From: Octopus sinensis
Lineage: Eukaryota
Direction: 5' to 3'
NCBI RefSeq assembly: GCF_006345805.1
Contig: NW_021834762.1
Coordinates: 1 to 26,502 of the forward strand
DNA length: 26,502 nt
The notes beneath the pieces are model-generated. The model saw only the letters and a list, made by a program, of their open reading frames with translations. It did not search any database and was not told the origin of the DNA. Within the stretch, counting starts at the first letter, position 1, and the number at the start of each line of letters is the position of its first letter. The position numbers and the translations under genes are program-made. This document shows positions 3,893 through 26,502 of the stretch, piece by piece.

Positions 3893-3923
<31 letters not shown>

Positions 3924-3965
3924 ATTTTCAAGCAGTGACTTATATACACATATGATATATATATG

Positions 3966-4035
<70 letters not shown>

Positions 4036-4156
4036 ATACATATATATATATACATATGTATATATACATTCATATACAAACACTCATATACAAACGTGTA
4101 AAACATATATGCATGTGTGAGTGTGTATGTGTGTGTGTGTGTGTGTGCATATATAT
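3890..4156. repeat. (TA)n/(TG)n microsatellite cluster
   Basis: Read directly. Confidence 0.9.
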
Positions 4157-4157
4157 A

Positions 4158-4564
4158 GGCGCAGGAGTGGCTGTGTGGTAAGTAGCTTGCTTACCAACAA
4201 CATGCTCCCGAGTTCAGTCTAACTGCTTGGCACCTTGGGCGAGTTTCTTCCACTATAACTTCGGACTGGCCAAAGCCTTGTGAGTAGATTTGGTAGACGG
4301 AAACTTGAAGAAGCCCGTCGTATATATACATATGTATATATGTATTTGTATGTGTGTGTATATGTTTGTGTATCTGTGTTTGTCCCCCCGACATTGCTTG
4401 ACAACCAATGCTGGTGTGTTTACGTCCCCGTAACTTAGCGGTTCGGCAAATAGACCGATAGAACAAGTACTAGGCTTATAAAGGATAATTCCTGGAGTTG
4501 ATTTATTCGACTAAAGGCGATGCTCCAGCATGGCCGCAGTCAAATGACTGAAACAAGTAAAAGA
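4158..4564 (+). mobile_element. tRNA-derived SINE, family F3 (CORE-like segment, internal TA/TG microsatellite), full length
   Basis: GGCGCAGGAGTGGCTGTGTGG head, CACCTTGGGCGAG CORE-like motif, tail TGACAACC..GCTCCAGCATGGCCGCAGTCAAATGACTGAAACAAGTAAAAGA; many copies in the window. Confidence 0.9.
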
Positions 4565-4599
4565 TTCCGCTCAAACGTGTTTGTATCTAGTCCTGCAAA

Positions 4600-4860
4600 T
4601 TGTATTTCTATACGACAGACTATGCTGACGAGTTTGCAGATTTCCATGTATCCATATGCGTGGATATTAACAATCGAAACTGATCGGTACATAGGTAATC
4701 GTGATCATTTCGTATATTTTCATTTGTCTTGCTTATTTTTAACACTTTGGTTTGTGCTGAGTTTTTATTTGAGAACACATTCTTCGTGGAAAATAGCGAT
4801 TTTGACGTCTATATCTAGCATGTTGACCGTCCACTTTTTGTGGTCAGTCCTTTAAATTTA
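4600..4860 (+). mobile_element. Diverged copy of hammerhead-bearing repeat H2 (PLE/retrozyme-like)
   Basis: Aligns by eye to 25370-25612 (e.g. TTTGACGTCTATATCTAGCATGTTGAC, ATTTCGTATATTTT). Confidence 0.8.
4620..4694 (+). ncRNA. Type I hammerhead ribozyme motif (H2, diverged copy)
   Basis: Stem I CUAUG(4620-24)/CAUAG(4690-94); core CUGACGA 4625-31; stem II GUUUG/CAAUC (one mismatch) with inner hairpin UAUCCA/UGGAUA; GAAAC 4676-80; stem III with GAUC loop; GUA triplet 4687-89. Confidence 0.85.
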
Positions 4861-5048: not shown

Positions 5049-5559
5049 AACATTTATTCATACATAATGTGTGGGTTTGTGTGTATGTGCTTTTCTCAGT
5101 CTTTGTATGTTTACGGTTTCAAATTATCATACTTGCTTCTTCTCCTCTCTCTCTCTCACTCTCTCTTTCTTTCTTTCTTTTGTCAATCCACAAACAGAAT
5201 TTCCCGCCACCACCACCACCACCAACGACCATCACCATACCCTCAGAAAAATATTCTCCTCTCAATATCCATATACGAAATAAATATAAGGCATAAACAT
5301 GCCATGTTCACCAGGTAGAGCGAAGGGTACCGTAACCCCATACCCCTTCAACAATCGGTGGGAATTTACTGTTCAAGCTTTACGCCTCTTAGGGGCCAGG
5401 TTGTAGTCAAGAATACATTGCGGATAAAGGCGGAGGAGGAGAAGGTAAGAGCAGTTAACGACAAAAGGGTTCCAAGCAAAACGCCTTAGACAGGGTTAAA
5501 TCGGTTAAGCCGTATCCCATATGTATATGAGTGCGTGGGCGAATATACGTACATGCATG

Positions 5560-5635
5560 CATACATACATACATACATACATACATACATACATACATAC
5601 ATACATACATACATACATACATACATACATACATA
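5560..5635. repeat. (CATA)n microsatellite
   Basis: Read directly. Confidence 0.95.
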
Positions 5636-8364: not shown

Positions 8365-8570
8365 AGTTCTATATTTAAGAGATGAGGAATTTTGTACATT
8401 ATTAAATTATTTACATTATTTACATTTGACGGATATTTGTCCTCGTCTTGTTTGTTGTTAACACAACGTTTCGGCTGATATACCCTCCAGCCTTCCTCAG
8501 ATGTCTTGCAGAAATTTGGAACCTGCGTTCTCATTACTAAGGTTCTCATTCCTTACCACTACGCCATATG
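8365..8570 (-). mobile_element. Repeat H1, inverted copy with an internal deletion
   Basis: Reverse complement of 8579-8594 joined to the AGGAATGAGAAC..hammerhead..TTAAATATAGAACT part of the family. Confidence 0.85.
8460..8505 (-). ncRNA. Minimal type I hammerhead motif (H1), intact
   Basis: Minus strand reads GACAU-CUGAGGA-A-GGCUG(GAGGGUAUAU)CAGCC-GAAAC-GUU-GUGUU; palindromic AACGUU stem III; stem I GACAU/GUGUU. Confidence 0.85.
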
Positions 8571-8575
8571 TCCGT

Positions 8576-8954
8576 GCGCATATGGCGTAGTGGTTAAGAG
8601 CGCGGGCTACTAATCCCAAGATTCCGTGTTCGATTCCAAGCAGTGTCAGGAACAACAACAACAACAACAACAACAACAATAATAATAAGAAGAAGAAGAA
8701 GAAGAAAGAAAGAAGAAAGAAAGAAGAAAGAAAGAAGAAGAAAGAAGAAAGAAAGAAGAAAGAAAGAAGAAGAAGAGAAGAAGAAGAAGAAGAAGAAGAA
8801 GAATGATAACATCGCAAAATACCTTAGGAATGAGAACCCAGGTTCGAAATTTCCCCAAGACACCTGATGAAGGCTGGAGGGTATATCAGCCGAAACATTG
8901 TGTTAATAACAAACCAGATGAGGACAAATATCCGTCAAGTGTAAATAATGTACA
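8576..8954 (+). mobile_element. Repeat H1: tRNA-like Pol III head, AAC/GAA microsatellite, hammerhead-bearing tail
   Basis: A-box TGGCGTAGTGG 8583-93, B-box GTTCGATTCC 8628-37, microsatellite 8651-8805, hammerhead 8859-8904. Confidence 0.85.
8859..8904 (+). ncRNA. Minimal type I hammerhead motif (H1), one stem III lesion
   Basis: GACAC-CUGAUGA-A-GGCUG..CAGCC-GAAAC-AUU-GUGUU; A at 8897 breaks the AACGUU palindrome. Confidence 0.75.
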
Positions 8955-9289
8955 AAAAGTGTTCATCAATCCTCCTTTGAAGTATCCACTTCTGCTTTGA
9001 TATTAAAAAAAAAAAGAGGGTACGTTGCACAATCTCGTTTCTCGCATAATCTTAACTGGGACGTCTTTGATAATAAATCGATCAGGGGGGATGTGAGGCT
9101 AAATAACGACAACAATAGCAATAACAATAATAAATGATATTAACCGTACAACCACCGCCACCTCCCTATCGCAACCGCTACGACCATCACTATCATTCTC
9201 ATCACAAACATCTTCGACTAGGGATCGCCTAAAATAGCAGCCCTATTGACTTACCGCATTTGTGTAAAAAAACTCAAGATGCCTTATCT

Positions 9290-9695
9290 TTTAGTTGTTT
9301 CGTTTGACTGTGGCCATGCTGGTGCACAGCCTTGAAGAATTTTAGGCGAATGAATCTCCTCCCGTACTTATTGTCTTTTTAAACCCGGCATATATTCTAT
9401 CAGCTAAGTTACGGGGACGTAAACAAAGCAACACCGGTTGTCAAGCGGTGAGGGGACAAACACAGACACAAACATACATACACATACACAAACGCACGCA
9501 CGCGCACGCACACACGCACGCGCACGCACACACGCACACACATACATATATATATACGAAGGTTTCTTTCAGTTTCCATGTACCAGATCCACACGCAAGG
9601 CCCGAGGCTATAGTAGAAGATATACGCTTAGGTGCCAGGCTGTGGGACTGAACCTGGAACCAAGTGGCCGAGAAGCTAGCTTTTTACCGCACACC
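9290..9695 (-). mobile_element. SINE F3, diverged full-length copy
   Basis: Reverse complement of F3 tail, internal CA/CG repeat and head. Confidence 0.85.
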
Positions 9696-9977: not shown

Positions 9978-10730
9978 GTACTCCGTCGGTTAAGACGATG
10001 AGCGTTCCAGTTGACCCGATCAACGGAACACCTTACTCGTGAAATTAACTTGCAAGTAGCTGAGCATTCCTCATACATGAATACCTATTTCTTTACTACC
10101 CACAAGGGGCTAAACACATAGGAGAGAAACAAAGACAGACAAACGGATTAAGTCGATTACATCGACCCCAGTGCGTAACTGGTACTTAATTCATCGACCC
10201 CGAAAGGATGAAAGGCAAAGTCGACCTCGGCGGAATTTGAACTCAGAACGTAACGGCAGACGAAATACCTATTTCTTTACTGTCCACAAGGGGCTAAACA
10301 CAGGAGACAAACAAGGATAGACAGATGGATTAAGTCGATTATATCGACCCCAGTGCGTAACTGGTACTTAATTTTTCGACCCCGAAAGGATGAAAGGCAA
10401 AGTCAACCTCGGCGGAATTTGAACTCAGAACGTTACGGTAGACGAAATACCGCTAAGCATTTCGCCCGGCGTGCTAACGATTCTGCCAGCTCGCCACCTT
10501 GCATATATGTGTGCCTTCAACGTAGTTCTGAGGGAGATTCAGTGTGACACAGAATGTGACAAGAATGGCCCTTTGTAATTACAGGTACAACACATTTTTT
10601 GTCAGCTCCGTCGACTGGAGCAAGGTAAAATAAAGAGACTTGCTCAAGGATATAGCGCACCGCCGGGGGATCGAACATGAGACGTTACGATCGCAAGCCG
10701 AAAACCCTAATCTCTAAGCCATGCACTTCA
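9978..10730 (-). mobile_element. SINE F4 (tRNA head plus CORE-like CTTGAGCAAG segment) with the F2-type tail, interrupted by an F1 insertion
   Basis: Head about 10730-10592; tail segments 10592-10505 and 10078-9978 match the 3' module of F2. Confidence 0.75.
10081..10498 (-). mobile_element. SINE F1: one head plus two tandem 184-bp bodies
   Basis: Unit marker ATACCTATTTCTTTAC at 10081 and 10265; single head at about 10448-10498. Confidence 0.92.
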
Positions 10731-14321: not shown

Positions 14322-14528
14322 AGTTCTATATTTAAGAGATGAGGAACTATGTACATTATTTACATTATTTACATTTGACGGATATTTGTCCTCATCTTGT
14401 TTGTTGTTAACACAACGTTTCGGTTGACATACCTTCCAGCCTAGTTGTTAAGAGCGCGGGCTACCAAAACAAAGATTCCGAGTTCGATTCCAAGCAGTGA
14501 CCTGAACAATAACAACAACAACAACAAC

Positions 14529-14559
<31 letters not shown>

Positions 14560-14710
14560 TCGAAAAATACCTTAGGAATGAGAACCTAGGTTCGAAATTT
14601 CCCCAAGACACCTGATGAAGGCTGGAGGAGGGTATACTGGCTGAAATGTTGAGTTAATAACAAACAAGATAAGGACAAATATCCGTTAAATGTAAATAAT
14701 GTAAATAATA
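14322..14710. mobile_element. Second H1 locus: inverted truncated arm (14322-14441, minus) plus tRNA-headed copy (14442-14710, plus)
   Basis: B-box GTTCGATTCC 14482-91, (AAC)(AAT) tract, degenerate hammerhead GACAC-CUGAUGA-A-GGCUG..GAAAU-GUU-GAGUU at 14607-14655; the left arm stops at ..CAGCC. Confidence 0.85.
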
Positions 14711-15264: not shown

Positions 15265-15480
15265 ATGTGTGTGTGTGTTTGTGTGTCTGTGTTTGTCTCT
15301 CCTAGCATTGCTTGACAACCGATGCTGGTGTGTTTACGTCCCCGTCACTTAGCGCTTCGGCAAAACAGTCCGATAGAATAAGTACTGGGCTTACAAAGAA
15401 TAAGTCCCGGGGTCGATTTGCTCGACTAAAGGTGGTGCTCCAGCATGGCCGCAGTCAAATGACTGAAACAAGTAAAAGAG
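15015..15480 (+). mobile_element. Two headless SINE F3 tail segments (15015-15184 and about 15200-15480, the latter with a GT tract)
   Basis: TGACAACCGATG..CGACTAAA..GGTGCT..GCATGGCCG tail motifs occur twice. Confidence 0.8.
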
Positions 15481-15652
15481 TAAAGAGTATAGCTATGAGA
15501 CAGACAGACAGATAAGCGAATTTGTCAACTGAAGATCAGATGAAGAAGCCTAAACGGCAACAGGTTCTGTAACTCAAAGGGGCCTAGGTGGCAGCACTGT
15601 AGCTGTGCATTTCCAACGCAATGTGTTTGTGTGTAAATAATCTGTGTGTTGA

Positions 15653-16252
15653 GGCGGCGAGCTGGCAGAAACGTTAGCGCGCCGGGCGAAATGCGTAGCC
15701 GTATTTCGTCTGCCGTTACGTTCTGAGTTCAAATTTCGCCGAGTTCGACTTTGCCTTTCATCCTTTCGGGGTCGATACATTAAGTACCAGTTACGCACTG
15801 GGGTCGATATAATCGACTTAATCCATCTGTCTATCCTTGTTTGTCCCCTCTGTGTTTAGCCCCTTGTGGGTAGTAAAGAAATAGGCATTTCGTCTGCTGC
15901 TACGTTCTGAGTTCAAATTCCGCCGAGGTCAACTTTGCCTTTCATCCTTTCGGGCTCGATAAATTAAGTACCAGTTACGCACTGGGGTCGATATAATCGA
16001 CTTAATCCATCTGTCTGTCCTTGTTTGTCCCCTCTGTGTTTAGCCCCTTGTGGGTAGTAAAAAATAGGCATTTCGTCTGCCGCTACGTTCTGAGTTCAAA
16101 TTCCGCCGAGGTCGACTTTGCCTTTCATCCTTTCGGGGTCGATTAAATAAGTACCAGTTACTCACTGGGCTTGATATAATCGACTTAATCCGTTTGTATG
16201 TCCTTGTTTGTCCTTTCTGTGTGTAGCCCCTTGTGGGTAGTGAAGAAATAAG
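15653..16252 (+). mobile_element. SINE F1: one head plus three tandem 183-184-bp bodies
   Basis: ATTTCGTCTGC unit starts at 15703, 15887 and 16070. Confidence 0.93.
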
Positions 16253-16708
16253 TAAATAATATGTGTGTGTGTGAGTGTTTGTGTGTGTTTTTCAAGGACA
16301 TGTCAATCAGACAGTCGGATGTGAGGGGAGCGGGAGTTACCCCACCCACATTGTTTTTTTTGTTTTCAATCTATTGACTTAAGGGTTTTATAATGAATAT
16401 AGAAATGAACCTTAAGACTGGTTTCTGCTCTTTGTTTTATATTATTTTCACTTTTGTTTTTTGTTGCCTTTTTTGTTGCCTTTTGTTTGTATTTCGTTCT
16501 TCACCCTTTCCTTCGTTTTATGCGGATGACGTTATTCGGAGTAACAAGCTAGTGTGTTTGTGGGGGGGGGGAGGTAGGAGAGATTAGTGAATGATATAAC
16601 TGGATGTAGTGATGTTCATCTGTAACTCTTTCGCCTGATGGAGCCCAGCGGTGACGTCATGTAACGGAGACTGAATAAAATGTAAATATAGACAGAAAAA
16701 TTCAAATT

Positions 16709-17110
16709 TGGCGGCGTAGTAAGAAGCTTGCTTAATAACCGCATGGTTCCGGGTTCAGTACCACTGCGTGGCACCTTGGGCAAGTGTTTTCTCCCATAGC
16801 CTCGGGCCGATCAAAGCCTTGCGAGTGGATTTGGTAGACGGAAATTGAAAGAAGCCCATCGTATATATATGCATGTATGTATGTATGTATGTATGTATGT
16901 ATGTATGTATTTGTGTGTCTGTATTAGTTCCACCACTACCATCGCTTGATAACCGTTGTTGGTGAGTTTACGTCCCTGTAATTAAGCGATTCGGGAAAGA
17001 GACCCATAGAATAAATACTAGGCTTACAAGGAATAATTCCTGGGGCCGATCTGTTCAACTGGAGGTGGTGCTCCAGCATGGCCGTAGTCAAATGACTGAA
17101 ACAAGTAAAA
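16709..17110 (+). mobile_element. SINE F3, near full length
   Basis: Head, CACCTTGGGCAAGTG, internal (TATG)n and tail all present. Confidence 0.88.
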
Positions 17111-19443: not shown

Positions 19444-19478
<35 letters not shown>

Positions 19479-19595
19479 CATACGAACATATACTTACACA
19501 TATACGTACACACAATGTTAGATAAGCAGGGGAAGAGAAGGGGAGGAAAAGAGGGAGACAGGGAAAGAAAGTGAGAGAGAGAGAGAGAGATAGAG

Positions 19596-20277: not shown

Positions 20278-20395
20278 ATGGCCTGCCTCGGTGGTAAGAT
20301 GTTTGTTTCTCAGTCCCATGGTCCTGGGTTCAATCTCACTGCGTGTCACTTTGGGTCGATCAGAGCCTTGTGAATATATTTGGTGGATTGAAACT
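20278..20395 (+). mobile_element. SINE F3 head fragment
   Basis: GTGGTAAGA..GGGTTCAATCTCACTGCGTG..GAGCCTTGTGA..TTTGGTGGA..GAAACT. Confidence 0.65.
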
Positions 20396-20397
20396 TG

Positions 20398-20585
20398 TAC
20401 TTGTTTCGGTTATTGGACCGCTGCCATGCTGGAGCACGGCCTCGATGGGACTTTGTTGAATAAATCGCCCCAGTACTCATTGATAAGCCTTAGTACTTAA
20501 TTTATCGCTCTTCTTTTACCAAACTGCTAGGTTAGGGGATGTAAACAAGTGAAATCGGTTGTCTAGCGATGGGGAGGGGCGACAA

Positions 20586-20804: not shown

Positions 20805-21012
20805 ATTTCCAATTTAACACAACGCCAGCAAGTTTGGGGGAGAGGATGAGTCAATTACATCGACCCCAGCGCTCAACTGGTACTTGTTTTATCGACTTCG
20901 AAAGAGTGAAAGGCAAAGTCGACCTCGGCGAAATTTGAACTCAGAACGTAAAGACAAACGAAATAGCGCTAAGCATTTCGCCCGGCGCGATAACGTTTCT
21001 GCTAGCTCGCCC
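20805..21012 (-). mobile_element. SINE F1 monomer
   Basis: Body and head match F1. Confidence 0.88.
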
Positions 21013-21029
21013 CTCTCTAGTAAAACATA

Positions 21030-21214
21030 TATTCTTTTCTACTCTAGACACAAGGGCTGAAATTCGGCGGGGGGTGGCAGTCGATTACTTAATTTATCAA
21101 CCTCGAAAGAATGAAAGGCAAAATCGACCTTGGCGGAATTTGAACTCAAAATGTAAAGACGGATGAAATACTGCTAAGCATTTCGTCCGGCATGCTAACG
21201 TTTCTGCCATTTCG
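21030..21214 (-). mobile_element. SINE F1 monomer with a small internal deletion
   Basis: Body and head match F1; adjacent to the previous copy but retains its own head. Confidence 0.85.
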
Positions 21215-21283
21215 TAACCTTATTATTTTATATTATTAAATTTTATCAGGATTTATATTTTTAAAAAGCGATTAAAATATTTG

Positions 21284-21998: not shown

Positions 21999-22194
21999 CT
22001 GATGTGTCTGTGTTGATCAACCCACCATCGCTTGACAACCGATGTTGGCGTGTTTACGTCCTCGTAACTAGGCAGTTCATCAATAGAGAGCCATAGAATA
22101 ACTACTAGGCTTACAAAGAATAAGTCCTGGGGATCGATTTGTTCGACTACAGGCGGTGCTACAGCTTGGCCGCGCCTGAAACAAGTATAAGAAG
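21284..22194 (+). mobile_element. SINE F3 split by an F2 insertion in its internal microsatellite
   Basis: Head 21284-21432, tail about 22000-22194. Confidence 0.85.
21469..21851 (-). mobile_element. SINE F2, near-consensus copy nested in F3
   Basis: Complete reverse complement of F2 from TGGAAGCACTCC to CATTGCGCCTCC. Confidence 0.93.
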
Positions 22195-24371: not shown

Positions 24372-24410
<39 letters not shown>

Positions 24411-24657
24411 ATTATTATATTTAGGGTAAAAATTGATATTTATCAATTAAAACGTTGGTCTAGTATATTAAAGAAAGAATCCGAAGATTAAAATATTTAT
24501 ATATACCAATTAAGGACTGAACACGAAAAAGTGGACAGTCAACATGCTAGATATATACGTCAATCGCCATTCTCCACAAAAAGTCTATGTTCTCAGATCA
24601 AACTCAACACAAAATCAAAACAATAAACAAGTGAAAAATATACGAAATAATATTTAC

Positions 24658-24722
24658 CCATGTACTAAATTCAGTTTCGGCTGTTATTTTCCGCAGGAAA
24701 AGTGCAGCCATCATCAGCATGG
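24658..24722 (-). ncRNA. Type I hammerhead motif (H2), minus-strand copy
   Basis: Reverse complement of 25385-25450, with one fewer U in the inner loop. Confidence 0.85.
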
Positions 24723-25384
24723 TCCCATATAAAATGTAATTGCTGTACTAAATGCCAACACGATACCGAAATATCGCGTGCATGGAGTACGGCCTATTAC
24801 ATTTGAAATATATATTTCAAATGTCTCTAATTTTGGCGCGATGAGACCCGAGAAAACCAGCTGCAGCTAATAGTTAGCAGCAGTTTTTATCGGTTAGAGA
24901 ACAAATATTTATATAACATTAAATTTAGGGTAAAAATTGATATTTATCAATTAGAACCAGTGGTCTAGCATATTAAAGAAAGAATCCGAAGATTAAAATA
25001 TTTATATATACCAATTAAGGACTGAACACGAAAAAGTGGACAGTCAACATGCTAGATATAGACGTCAAATCGCCATTCTCCACAAAAAGTCTATGTTCTC
25101 AGATCAAACTCAAGCACAAAACCAAAACAATAAACAAGTGAAAAATATACGAAATAAATATTTACCCATGTACTAAATTCAGTTTCGGCTGTTATTTTCC
25201 GCAAGGAAAAGTGCAGCCTAACTGCTGCTAACTATTAGCTGCAGGCTGGTTTTCTCGGGTCTCATCGCGCCAAAATTAGAGACATTTGAAATATATATTT
25301 CAAATGTAATAGGCCGTACTCCATGCACGCGATATTTCGGTATCGTGTTGGCATTTAGTACAGCAAATTACATTTTATATGGGA

Positions 25385-25450
25385 CCATGCTGATGATGGC
25401 TGCACTTTTCCTTGCGGAAAATAACAGCCGAAACTGAATTTAGTACATGG
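25385..25450 (+). ncRNA. Type I hammerhead ribozyme motif (H2), canonical core
   Basis: CCAUG-CUGAUGA(25390-96)-U-GGCUG[cac UUUUCC(UUGC)GGAAAA uaa]CAGCC-GAAAC-UG(AAUU)UA-GUA(25443-45)-CAUGG. Confidence 0.9.
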
Positions 25451-25601
25451 GTAAATATTCATTTCGTATATTTTTCACTTGTTTATTGTTTTGGTTTTGT
25501 GTGAGTTTGATCTGAGAACATAGACTTTTTGTGGAGAATGGCGATTTGACGTCTATATCTAGCATGTTGACTGTCCACTTTTTCGTGTTCAGTCCTTAAT
25601 T

Positions 25602-25603
<2 letters not shown>

Positions 25604-25759: not shown

Positions 25760-26151
25760 AACATTTCTACTATAGACACAAGGCCTGAAATTTGGGGGTG
25801 GGGATAGTCGATTATATCGCCCCCATTACGCAACTGGTACTTAGTTTATCGACCCCGAAAGGATGGAAGGCAAAGTCGACCTCGGCGGAATTTAAACTCA
25901 GAACGTAAAGACAGACGAAATACCTATTTCTTTACTACCCACAAGAGACTAAACACAGAAGGTACAAACAAGGACAAACGGATTAAGTCTATAACATCGA
26001 CCTCAGTGCGTAACTGGTACTTAATTTAATCGACCCCGAAAGGATGAAAGGCAAAGTCGACCTCGGCGGATTTTTAACTCAGAACATGAAGACAGACGAA
26101 ATCCCGCTAAGCATTTCGCCCGGCGTGCTAACGTTTCTGCCAGCTCGCCGC
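25760..26151 (-). mobile_element. SINE F1: one head plus two bodies with different tails
   Basis: Head about 26102-26151; junction GAAATACCTATTTC at about 25917-25930; distal unit ends in a CCCCAAATTTCAGGCCTTGTG-type tail. Confidence 0.9.
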
Positions 26152-26502
26152 AGTTAAAATATACCGATAAACATTACGGCGAATTCGTAAATATATCTAC
26201 TAAATATATCAACCTATTTTTTCTTAATCGTTGATATCATGAATGGACAGACGACCGATTCTATACGGTATGTTGTACACGTTACGTCTTGTCGAGGAAG
26301 AGAGAAGCGCTTAACATAGCTATGAAGAGGTTTCTATCGAGATCGGCTGGAGATAATCAACATGGTTTTCAGAATACTGCTTTGTGAATGAAAAACAACG
26401 GTTAAAAATGGCGTGTGACAAAACCCGTTATCTGTTGCAGAAGGATTGTTGCACAGACACACGCACTGGCGTATATATCTATTTCTCTCTCTCTCTCTCC
26501 TC

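What the first reader, a model, noticed from the sequence alone, without database searches (positions are those of the whole stretch)
4620..4694. Compensatory covariation between two diverged H2 hammerheads (4620-4694 versus 25385-25450)
Seen: the flanks are visibly diverged, yet each helix is kept through paired changes. Stem I changes CCAUG/CAUGG to CUAUG/CAUAG. Stem II changes GGCUG/CAGCC to GUUUG/CAAUC (C-G to U-A, plus one mismatch). The inner hairpin changes UUUUCC/GGAAAA (loop UUGC) to UAUCCAU/GUGGAUA (loop AUGC). The stem III loop changes AAUU to GAUC and stays palindromic. The core differs only at the free N7 position (U to C), and GAAAC and the GUA triplet are invariant. Inference: selection acted on RNA folding and on the dimer-competent loop while the subfamilies were replicating, so the ribozyme mattered for transposition. 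The stem II extension (internal loop plus hairpin) could be a tertiary-contact or RT-recognition element.
Basis: partly seen in the sequence, partly recalled or inferred. Interest (0 to 1): 0.85.

Follow-up and report, generated by a model that had tools for sequence, protein, structure and literature searches.

The report
Covarying hammerhead ribozymes in retroelement copies
Two diverged copies of a short mobile element in an animal genome each carry a complete hammerhead self-cleaving RNA motif whose helices were kept by paired mutations; this is real, but it is the pattern already described for Penelope-like elements and animal retrozymes.

Summary
The two motifs exist at the stated coordinates. 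They are complete type I hammerheads. A helix-aware descriptor finds only these two and a near-identical inverted twin at 24658-24722(-), against 0.007 expected per random window.

The claimed compensatory changes in stems I and II are correct. Three details are wrong or incomplete:
- Copy B has an extra unpaired U between A9 and G10.1, so the cores differ at more than N7.
- The inner hairpin proposed for copy A is not the homologous or the stable one. A keeps B's UUUUCC/GGAAAA pairing as AUUUCC/GGAUAU and extends it through an insertion in the loop.
- A distal helix I beyond a conserved NNGA/GUAA internal loop was missed. It adds three more compensatory pairs.

Over 25 homologous pairs, 18 sites changed, 7 pairs changed on both sides, and 23 pairs still pair (P about 1e-4 to 1e-3). 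Selection on the RNA fold is therefore supported, although from only two lineages.

The host is a 0.4-0.5 kb non-coding element. It ends at (TA)n and sits in an inverted plus partial-tandem cluster typical of Penelope-like insertions. No external relatives were retrievable and Rfam models do not score it. I file it as a new member of a known kind. A role in transposition is not shown.

The parts
4611..4703 (+). Copy A, extended type I hammerhead. Helix Ib is 4611-4615 / 4699-4703. The internal loop is CAGA 4616-4619 / GUAA 4695-4698. Helix Ia is 4620-4624 / 4690-4694. The core CUGACGA is 4625-4631. Helix IIa is GUUUG 4632-4636 / CAAUC 4671-4675, with a U.U mismatch. Helix IIb is AUUUCC 4640-4645 / GGAUAU 4662-4667, extended by 16 nt at 4646-4661 in place of B's 4-nt loop. 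GAAA is 4676-4679. The helix III palindrome ACUGAUCGGU is 4679-4688. A17 is 4689, so cleavage would fall at 4689/4690.
25377..25458 (+). Copy B3, extended type I hammerhead. Helix Ib is AUAU 25377-25380 / 25455-25458. The internal loop is GGGA 25381-25384 / GUAA 25451-25454. Helix Ia is 25385-25389 / 25446-25450. The core CUGAUGA is 25390-25396. The extra unpaired U is 25397. Helix IIa is GGCUG 25398-25402 / CAGCC 25425-25429. The internal loop is CAC 25403-25405 / UAA 25422-25424. Helix IIb is UUUUCC 25406-25411 / GGAAAA 25416-25421, with loop UUGC. GAAA is 25430-25433. The helix III palindrome ACUGAAUUUAGU is 25433-25444. A17 is 25445.
24658..24722 (-). Copy B1, a complete hammerhead. It is identical to B3 except for a 1-nt shorter loop II (UGC). 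A17 is at 24663.
25165..25218 (-). Copy B2, a 5'-truncated hammerhead. It starts exactly at G10.1 and lacks the stem I 5' strand and CUGAUGA-U, so it is not self-cleaving on its own. A17 is at 25171.
4566..4858 (+). A-type element copy. It is homologous to the B element from about 45-55 nt upstream of the ribozyme to the shared 3' end (...GTCAGTCCTTTAAATT). A (TA)n(GATA)n array follows it, and an unrelated SINE-like repeat (4400-4565) precedes it.
25220..25603 (+). B3 element copy. Its 3' end is ...TCAGTCCTTAATTGG, followed by (TA)n(GATA)n up to about 25738. Its 5' end abuts the inverted truncated B2 head-to-head, with one base between them.
24401..25218 (-). Partial tandem on the minus strand with a 509-nt period. 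It reads B2 core 25218->25011, a short (TA)n, an extension 25002->24886, B1 core 24885->24506, a short (TA)n, and an extension 24497->24401. The 508-nt cleavage-to-cleavage unit (25170->24663) folds at -135 kcal/mol, with z = -4.7 against shuffles.
4801..4839 (+). The most conserved block of the element, TTTGACGTCTATATCTAGCATGTTGAC(C/T)GTCCACTTTTT. It is 38/39 identical to 25545-25583. It is also present in B2 (25069-25043, minus) and in B1 (24563-24538, minus, 1 mismatch).

Best explanation
H2 is a type I hammerhead ribozyme carried by a short (about 0.4-0.5 kb), non-coding, AT-rich retroelement of the kind mobilised by Penelope-like elements. In other words, it is an animal 'non-LTR retrozyme' or pLTR-derived non-autonomous element.

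Shown here:
- Both diverged lineages, A and B, keep an intact catalytic core and five helical segments through six compensatory double substitutions.
- The helix III segment is a 10-12 nt palindrome. The predicted two-copy fold extends it between the molecules, as in a double hammerhead.
- The B locus has the inverted, 5'-truncated plus partial-tandem insertion architecture, and (TA)n flanks it on both sides.

Inferred from the described biology of these families:
- Read-through or multimeric transcripts are cut after GUA (4689, 25445, 24663 on the minus strand). The cut is made mainly by the dimeric form, because the monomer has a weak helix III and a competing fold.
- Unit-length RNAs with 5'-OH and 2',3'-cyclic phosphate ends are circularised by a host ligase.
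- A Penelope-type RT/GIY-YIG enzyme encoded elsewhere in the genome copies them into AT-rich or (TA)n DNA.

The paired changes between A and B were fixed while the two source lineages were active. The copies in this window are most likely inert fossils of those lineages.
For: - The motif is far beyond chance: 3 complete hits against 0.007 expected.
- For B the hammerhead fold is the minimum-energy fold. The homodimer cofold gives a 12-bp intermolecular helix III at -47.0 kcal/mol, against 2 x -17.7 for two monomers.
- Covariation is supported and by the simulations (P about 1e-4 to 1e-3).
- The 13 core and cleavage-site positions are unchanged, although 24% of aligned ribozyme positions differ.
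- G.U pairs occur in helices III and Ib, which makes the sense-strand RNA the constrained molecule rather than duplex DNA.
- Architecture: B2 is truncated and inverted against B3, and B2 to B1 form a tandem with a 509-nt period. All copies end at ...CAGTCCTT(T)AA(A)TT followed by TA-rich repeats: (TA)n(GATA)n in A and B3, a short (TA)n in B1 and B2.
- The unit RNA is strongly self-paired, z = -4.7, and has 34% GC.
- There is no coding capacity.
- Inverted 5'-truncated copies, partial tandems and (TA)n targets are described for Penelope-like elements (PMC8557442).
- Retrozymes have been proposed as Penelope-like derivatives (PMC7229834; bioRxiv 10.64898/2026.07.22.740005).
Against: - Only two independent lineages were available, and helix Ib was defined after looking at the folds.
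- No Rfam hammerhead model scores either copy, even at E <= 10 on 141-nt slices.
- Copy A has a U.U mismatch next to G10.1-C11.1. Its non-ribozyme fold is 7 kcal/mol better than the best core-free fold, so A itself may be inactive.
- No reverse transcriptase or GIY-YIG remnant is in the window.
- No relatives were found in any searchable collection.
- Only one intact ribozyme lies in the tandem, so this locus cannot release a unit RNA by itself.
- The A and B copies span the cleavage site, so they were not copied from simply cleaved linear monomers.
- Cleavage, circular RNA and mobilisation are all untested here.
Confidence: 0.75

Rival explanations
1. The fold is conserved for a non-catalytic job. 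It could be a recognition, priming or packaging structure for the mobilising RT/endonuclease, or a transcript-stability element. Self-cleavage would then be dispensable for spread.
For: - Catalytic hammerhead mutants do not change in vitro insertion by a Penelope-like enzyme, and no RNA-seq reads end at the cleavage site (PMC11167929).
- Hammerhead-less Naiads outnumber hammerhead-bearing elements (PMC8557442).
- Penelope-like hammerheads cleave poorly in vitro (PMC4209133).
- Here, covariation proves helices, not catalysis.
- The best-conserved part of the element is a 39-nt 3' block, not the ribozyme.
Against: - All 13 catalytic-core and cleavage-site positions are unchanged between A and B, although 24% of aligned ribozyme positions differ. 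At per-site divergences of 13-29%, P is 0.01-0.16. A mere hairpin scaffold would not require that.
- The palindromic helix III matches the known dimer-activation design (PMC4209133).
Confidence: 0.15
2. The paired changes are chance plus ascertainment. Both copies would be neutrally decaying relics, picked out because they still look like hammerheads.
For: - There are only two lineages.
- Two of the 25 pairs are broken in A.
- A's minimum-energy fold is not the ribozyme.
- Double transitions (C-G to U-A) keep pairing automatically.
- AUAU/AUAU in B is low-complexity sequence.
Against: - A was also found by homology alone, as the only non-B relative of the element in the window, and it has the full motif.
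- Seven of the 18 changed sites' pairs are double hits (P = 0.0013), and 23 of 25 pairs stay canonical (P <= 2e-4) even with 67% transitions.
- Slid-partner controls drop to 32-50% pairing.
- Three of the compensations are in a helix whose sequence is otherwise unrelated between the copies.
Confidence: 0.07
3. The B cluster (three near-identical copies in inverted and tandem order) is an assembly artefact of a single insertion, so it says nothing about the insertion mechanism.
For: - Arms 24740-24861 and 25245-25366 are 100% complementary.
- Complex Penelope-like insertions are known to cause assembly problems (PMC8557442).
Against: - The copies differ by about 2%, including a loop II indel. 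They have different 5' ends and different 3' continuations, which collapsed or duplicated reads would not produce.
- This rival does not touch the A-versus-B comparison.
Confidence: 0.1

Closest known systems
Hammerhead ribozymes of Penelope-like elements (min-HHRs and variants with a small palindromic helix III; Cervera & de la Pena 2014, PMC4209133; Lunse, Weinberg & Breaker, RNA Biol 2016/2017, as cited in PMC6765202)
   Same: - Type I topology.
- Proximal helix I of 5 bp.
- Long helix II.
- An unpaired nucleotide between A9 and G10.1 (copy B).
- A conserved G10.1-C11.1 pair.
- A palindromic 15.2-16.2 pair and loop III, implying dimeric action.
- Families rich in compensatory changes.
- Single, opposite-strand and tandem genomic copies.
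- AT-rich or microsatellite insertion sites.
   Different: - H2 has a real helix III (3-4 bp plus a tetraloop) rather than the bare ACGU.
- Helix I continues past a conserved 4x4 internal loop.
- Helix II is interrupted by a conserved 3x3 internal loop.
- Copy A lacks the extra nucleotide.
- No RT/GIY-YIG ORF or pLTR-ORF-pLTR structure is present in the window.
Animal non-LTR retrozymes (Cervera & de la Pena 2020, PMC7229834; Li, Clavereau & Pollet 2026, bioRxiv 10.64898/2026.07.22.740005)
   Same: - A short non-coding unit with low GC (34-38%) and a type I hammerhead.
- Tandem repetition (509-nt period).
- A strongly self-paired unit RNA.
- A proposed dependence on Penelope-like elements.
- A U.U mismatch at the base of helix II has a precedent in axolotl HHR_Amex2.
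   Different: - Only about 1.7 tandem units are present, with a single intact ribozyme.
- The other copies are solitary or inverted.
- The unit is longer than the monomer sizes I recall for these elements (about 170-400 nt; from memory, not checked in the papers read here).
- Circular RNA was not tested.
Classical metazoan type I hammerheads of repetitive DNA (newt satellite 2, Schistosoma Sm-alpha SINE-like elements; Rfam Hammerhead_1 RF00163)
   Same: - The catalytic core and the GUH site.
- A weak helix III with a palindromic loop, and activity as dimers.
- Residence in dispersed or tandem repeats.
   Different: - The Rfam models do not score H2 at all.
- H2 has no closed loop 1 or loop 2 at the canonical positions and has internal loops instead.
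- No pol III-type head was recognised in H2.

Membership tests
Hammerhead ribozyme, type I | Catalytic core C3 U4 G5 A6 N7 G8 A9 ... G12 A13 A14, plus A15.1-U16.1 and a non-G residue at position 17 | tested here: met
   All are present in A, B3 and B1. B has one extra U after A9, a variant reported in natural hammerheads (PMC4209133, citing De la Pena & Flores 2001).
Hammerhead ribozyme, type I | Three helices around the core, G10.1-C11.1, and open ends in helix I | tested here: met
   The descriptor hits. The fold of B equals its minimum-energy fold. Helix IIa of A has one U.U mismatch.
Hammerhead ribozyme, type I | Helices supported by covariation | tested here: met
   Six compensatory pairs in helices Ib, Ia, IIa and IIb, from two lineages only. 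Helix III shows only one-sided G.U-type changes. These also fit an alternative pairing with the core CUGA.
Hammerhead ribozyme, type I | Score at or above the gathering threshold of an Rfam hammerhead covariance model | tested here: not met
   No hammerhead match at the gathering threshold or at E <= 10, for the whole window and for 141-nt slices. The likely causes are the long interrupted stem II and the extra U. That attribution is my inference.
Hammerhead ribozyme, type I | Site-specific self-cleavage giving 5'-OH and 2',3'-cyclic phosphate ends | not testable with these tools
   This needs in vitro transcription and end mapping.
Penelope-like-element hammerhead | Short helix I, long helix II, unpaired nucleotide 5' of stem II, palindromic 15.2-16.2 pair and loop III | tested here: met
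   The unpaired nucleotide is present in B1, B2 and B3 but not in A.
Penelope-like-element hammerhead | Location in the pLTR of an element encoding RT and GIY-YIG endonuclease | tested here: not met
   No ORF of 90 aa or more with protein-like content, and no relevant Pfam hit among 10 candidate ORFs. The whole window was not scanned in six frames, because the tool refuses translations that contain stops.
Penelope-like-element insertion | Partial tandem plus an adjacent inverted 5'-truncated copy, with an AT-rich or (TA)n target | tested here: met
   The B locus, compared with the description in PMC8557442.
Non-LTR retrozyme | Head-to-tail tandem repeats, each with a functional type I hammerhead | tested here: inconclusive
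   About 1.7 units with a 509-nt period, but the upstream ribozyme (B2) is truncated.
Non-LTR retrozyme | Expression as unit-length circular RNA | not testable with these tools
   No transcriptome data were available. Only the predicted compact fold, z = -4.7.

The most novel reading that the evidence does not exclude
H2 may represent an undescribed architectural variant of the type I hammerhead. In it, both helix I and helix II continue past internal loops placed 5 bp from the core (NNGA/GUAA and CAN/UAA) that are largely conserved between A and B. These loops would replace the usual loop 1 / loop 2 tertiary contact.

H2 would belong to a lineage-specific family of Penelope-dependent retrozymes in a host group for which the searched literature reports no hammerheads. 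The repeat landscape reminds me of cephalopod genomes, from memory only. Current Rfam models would miss this family entirely.
Probability: 0.25. Interest if true: 0.45.

Novelty: new member of a known kind. Interest (0 to 1): 0.3.

Why it matters
The finding adds a clean, internally controlled example of purifying selection on a retroelement hammerhead. The same element appears in two diverged versions in one window, with helices rewritten and the core untouched.

It also shows that curated covariance models miss such copies, so genome annotation under-counts them.

It does not change the picture. Families of Penelope-like and retrozyme hammerheads rich in compensatory changes, and acting as dimers through a palindromic helix III, have been described since 2014. 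Whether cleavage is needed for transposition is the open question, and sequence alone cannot address it.

The conserved internal loops and the 39-nt 3' block are concrete targets for anyone who does test that question.

Tried and rejected
- Rfam was run at the gathering threshold and at E <= 10, on the whole window and on two 141-nt slices. There was no hammerhead hit. The many miRNA-like hits are microsatellites.
- I searched for relatives in order to build a family alignment:
  - Two patterns were tried: the 24-nt conserved block and a degenerate 3'-half ribozyme pattern.
  - Both were run against metagenome, viral and prokaryote-genome contigs.
  - There were no matches except two chance hits, L001 and L002, which lack CUGANGA.
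- I used the spurious 111-aa ORF across copy A as a protein proxy. Nothing was found.
- Full-text search for the SINE sequence, to identify the host, returned nothing.
Ten selected ORFs gave nothing relevant.
- A covariance model built from A, B1 and B3 found no further copies in the window. It gave only a weak 11-12 bit echo at the H1 motifs.
- I rejected H1 as a standard type I hammerhead with a helix III. It fits the helix-III-less 'min-HHR' layout instead.
- I considered that inverted copies truncate at the base of stem II as a rule (B2, and the H1 copy at 14442). The H1 case looks like an internal deletion of a composite repeat, so I dropped this as evidence.

Full report
**What is at the coordinates.** Each is a complete type I hammerhead:
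- a 5-bp helix I with open ends;
- CUGANGA;
- a hairpin-closed helix II that starts with G10.1-C11.1;
- GAAA;
- a short helix III that starts A15.1-U16.1 and C15.2-G16.2;
- a GUA triplet, then the 3' strand of helix I.

I wrote a descriptor that demands the core and all three helices. It finds three hits in the 26.5-kb window: A (4620-4694), B3 (25385-25450) and B1 (24658-24722, minus strand). It finds 0.007 hits per first-order Markov random window. A looser core-only pattern gave 6 matches against 0.66 expected. The motif is therefore real.

Rfam does not recognise it. No hammerhead model scored at the gathering threshold or at E <= 10, on the full window or on 141-nt slices.

**How many copies, and what carries them.** Self-BLAST and a covariance model built from the three ribozymes show four copies in all: one A-type and three B-type.

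The B copies are 98-99% identical to each other and form a compact cluster:
- On the minus strand, B2 runs 25218->25011. It is 5'-truncated exactly at G10.1, so it lacks CUGAUGA-U and the stem I 5' strand.
- B2 is followed by a short (TA)n, a roughly 115-nt extension, then full B1 (24885->24506), again a short (TA)n, and the same extension (24497->24401).
- This gives a 509-nt period.
- B3 (25220-25603, plus strand) abuts B2 head-to-head, with one base between them.
- TA-rich microsatellites flank both outer ends of the cluster.

Copy A (about 4566-4858) shares with B the region from some 45-55 nt upstream of the ribozyme to the common 3' end. That end is ...CAGTCCTT(T)AA(A)TT, followed by (TA)n(GATA)n.

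Nothing in the element or in the window looks coding.

An inverted 5'-truncated copy next to a partial tandem, at a (TA)n site, is the published signature of Penelope-like element insertions (PMC8557442). Pairs of such hammerheads on opposite strands, 100-700 bp apart, were noted in the original description (PMC4209133).

The 508-nt cleavage-to-cleavage RNA (25170->24663, minus strand) is predicted to be unusually self-paired: -135 kcal/mol against -105 +/- 6 for shuffles, z = -4.7. Its GC content is 34%. This is as described for animal retrozymes (PMC7229834).

Correct:
- Stem I changes CCAUG/CAUGG to CUAUG/CAUAG, a C-G to U-A change.
- Stem II changes GGCUG/CAGCC to GUUUG/CAAUC, one C-G to U-A change and one G-C to U.U change.
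- Loop III changes AAUU to GAUC and stays palindromic. More to the point, the whole helix III segment is self-complementary: ACUGAAUUUAGU in B and ACUGAUCGGU in A.
- Cofolding two B ribozymes yields the textbook double hammerhead with a 12-bp intermolecular helix III (-47.0 kcal/mol, against -35.4 for two monomers).

Wrong or incomplete:
1. B carries an extra unpaired U (25397) between A9 and G10.1 and A does not, so the cores differ at more than N7. An unpaired nucleotide at this place is one of the four recurrent traits listed for Penelope-like hammerheads (PMC4209133).
2. The inner hairpin assigned to A (UAUCCAU/GUGGAUA) yields a ribozyme fold of only -3.8 kcal/mol.
   - With the core held single-stranded, the best fold is -13.2 kcal/mol.
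   - That fold pairs AUUUCC (4640-4645) with GGAUAU (4662-4667), the positional homologues of B's UUUUCC/GGAAAA.
   - One pair is compensated (U-A to A-U) and one is lost (U-A to U.U).
   - The 16 nt at 4646-4661, which replace B's UUGC loop (12 extra alignment columns), extend the hairpin.
3. A's unconstrained minimum-energy fold (-20.4 kcal/mol) pairs core nucleotides, whereas B's minimum-energy fold is the ribozyme. This particular A copy may be a poor or dead ribozyme.

- Folding the ribozymes with 10 nt of flank shows, in both copies and in the same register, a 4x4 internal loop followed by a distal helix.
- The loop is CAGA/GUAA in A and GGGA/GUAA in B.
- The distal helix is UACGA/UCGUG in A (4611-4615 / 4699-4703) and AUAU/AUAU in B (25377-25380 / 25455-25458).
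- Three of its pairs differ on both sides and stay paired: A-U, G-C, C-G in A against U-A, A-U, U-A in B.
- Helix I and helix II therefore each carry an internal loop 5 bp from the core that is largely conserved between A and B (NNGA/GUAA and CAN/UAA; two and one letters differ).
- That placement looks right for a helix I / helix II tertiary contact. This is my inference and I did not test it.

**Is the covariation more than chance?**
- On the extended alignment (A, B3, B1; 25 pairs), 94.7% of cells pair and six pairs change on both sides while staying paired.
- Only 1 of 500 column shuffles reaches this. Sliding the 3' partners by 1-3 columns drops pairing to 32-50%, with 0-1 compensatory pairs.
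- RNAalifold, given no structure, recovers helices Ib, Ia, IIa and IIb with the same six compensations.
- In my own simulation the 18 observed changes were placed at random on the 50 paired sites of B.
  - At least 7 doubly hit pairs occurred with P = 0.0013.
  - At least 23 canonical pairs occurred with P = 4e-5 at 50% transitions and 2e-4 at 67% transitions.
For helices I and IIa, P is 0.003 for the double hits and 0.03 for retention. For all 20 pairs without helix Ib, P is 0.004-0.017 for retention.
- The ribozyme as a whole is no better conserved than its flanks: 76% substitution identity, against 71% upstream and 87% downstream. Its 13 core and cleavage-site positions are nevertheless all unchanged.

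Caveats:
- There are only two independent lineages.
- I found helix Ib after looking at the folds.
- B's AUAU/AUAU is low-complexity sequence.
- Helix III shows only one-sided changes through G.U pairs. These fit equally well an alternative pairing of its 3' strand with the core CUGA, which RNAalifold actually prefers. Such a competing inactive monomer fold would fit dimer-dependent cleavage (my reading).

**What it most likely is and does.** The best-supported reading is as follows.
- H2 is a hammerhead of the Penelope-like / retrozyme kind. It sits in a non-autonomous element that depends on a reverse transcriptase/endonuclease encoded elsewhere.
- The paired changes show that the RNA fold was under selection while the A and B source lineages diverged.
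- The later steps are inferred from the literature, not shown here (PMC4209133, PMC7229834, PMC6765202, bioRxiv 10.64898/2026.07.22.740005). These steps are cleavage after GUA (mainly as a dimer), ligation to circles, and reverse transcription into (TA)n DNA.
  - catalytic mutants of a Penelope-like hammerhead do not affect in vitro insertion (PMC11167929);
  - hammerhead-less Naiads thrive (PMC8557442).
- A structural, non-catalytic role remains a live rival.

**Relatives elsewhere.** None could be retrieved.
- Exact and degenerate DNA patterns against metagenome, viral and prokaryote-genome contigs gave nothing except two chance hits.
- An ORF-proxy protein search gave nothing.
- Full-text searches found no paper on hammerheads in cephalopods or octopus beyond a passing mention of Naiad elements. 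The window's repeat landscape reminds me of those genomes, from memory only.

**Verdict.**
- The object is a new member of a well-described kind. Compensatory-change-rich families, the extra nucleotide before stem II, the G10.1-C11.1 pair and the palindromic helix III are the four hallmarks already listed in 2014 (PMC4209133).

Noticed in passing
It fits the Penelope-like 'min-HHR' layout: a 5-bp helix I (GACAY/GUGUU), CUGANGA, an unpaired A, stem II GGCUG/CAGCC (the same stem as H2-B), GAAAC, and no helix III, only the ACGU palindrome. Only the 8460-8505 copy is intact. In 8859-8904 the CpG of ACGU has decayed to ACAU, and in 14607-14655 to AUGU. My H2 covariance model hits two of the copies at 11-12 bits only.
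   Followed up: partly
window 8407-8960 and 14353-14708: The H1 copies come as head-to-head inverted pairs in both loci. Between the arms lie a tRNA-like fragment (about 8583-8650 and 14443-14510, with box A/B-like GTGGTTAAGAG...GTTCGATTCC) and an (AAC)n/(AAG)n/(AAT)n array. ARAGORN calls no tRNA. This may be one composite repeat, a Sm-alpha-like SINE with a hammerhead, or a Penelope-style inverted insertion.
   Followed up: partly
window 4801-4839, 25545-25583, 25043-25069 (-), 24538-24563 (-): A 39-nt block, TTTGACGTCTATATCTAGCATGTTGAC(C/T)GTCCACTTTTT, is 38/39 identical between the A and B elements. It is far better conserved than the ribozyme (76%) and lies about 20-60 nt from the 3' end. 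It is a better candidate for an RT- or endonuclease-recognition or initiation site than the stem II extension.
   Followed up: partly
window 25390-25393 with 25441-25444; 4625-4628 with 4685-4688: The 5' strand of helix III repeats the core's CUGA. The 3' strand of helix III can therefore pair with the core instead, extending helix I. RNAalifold prefers this inactive conformer in all copies. It may act as a monomer-off / dimer-on switch.
   Followed up: partly
window 25213-25228: The B2/B3 head-to-head junction forms a small hairpin, GCAGC-AGTTAG-GCTGC. B3's 5' end (AACTGCTGC) and B2's truncation point in stem II (GGCTGC) share GCTGC. This may be microhomology at a template switch.
   Followed up: no
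window 24740-24861 and 25245-25366: These inverted arms are 122 nt long and 100% complementary, within copies that otherwise differ by about 2%. Possible causes are a very recent event, gene conversion or an assembly effect.
   Followed up: no
window 4400-4565, 15314-15479, 16948-17110, 22034-22192, 20390-20563 (-), 9286-9442 (-), and weaker copies: An abundant SINE-like repeat of about 165 nt (...GGCGATGCTCCAGCATGGCCGCAGTCAAATGACTGAAACAAGTAAAAGA) directly abuts the 5' side of copy A. There are ten or more copies at 65-89% identity.
   Followed up: no
window 10080-10510, 15650-16255, 20814-21230, 25771-26162: Another repeat family with a roughly 182-nt tandem period occurs in direct and inverted orientation at 75-93% identity. 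One copy starts right after the (GATA)n tail of B3.
   Followed up: no
window 3895-4170, 5519-5620, 9481-9551, 16865-16935, 19444-19511 and others: All sub-threshold Rfam matches (mir-297, mir-466, mir-3149, mir-1277, SCARNA7) lie on (TG/CA)n, (TA)n, (GATA)n or (CATA)n microsatellites. They are composition artefacts.
   Followed up: yes
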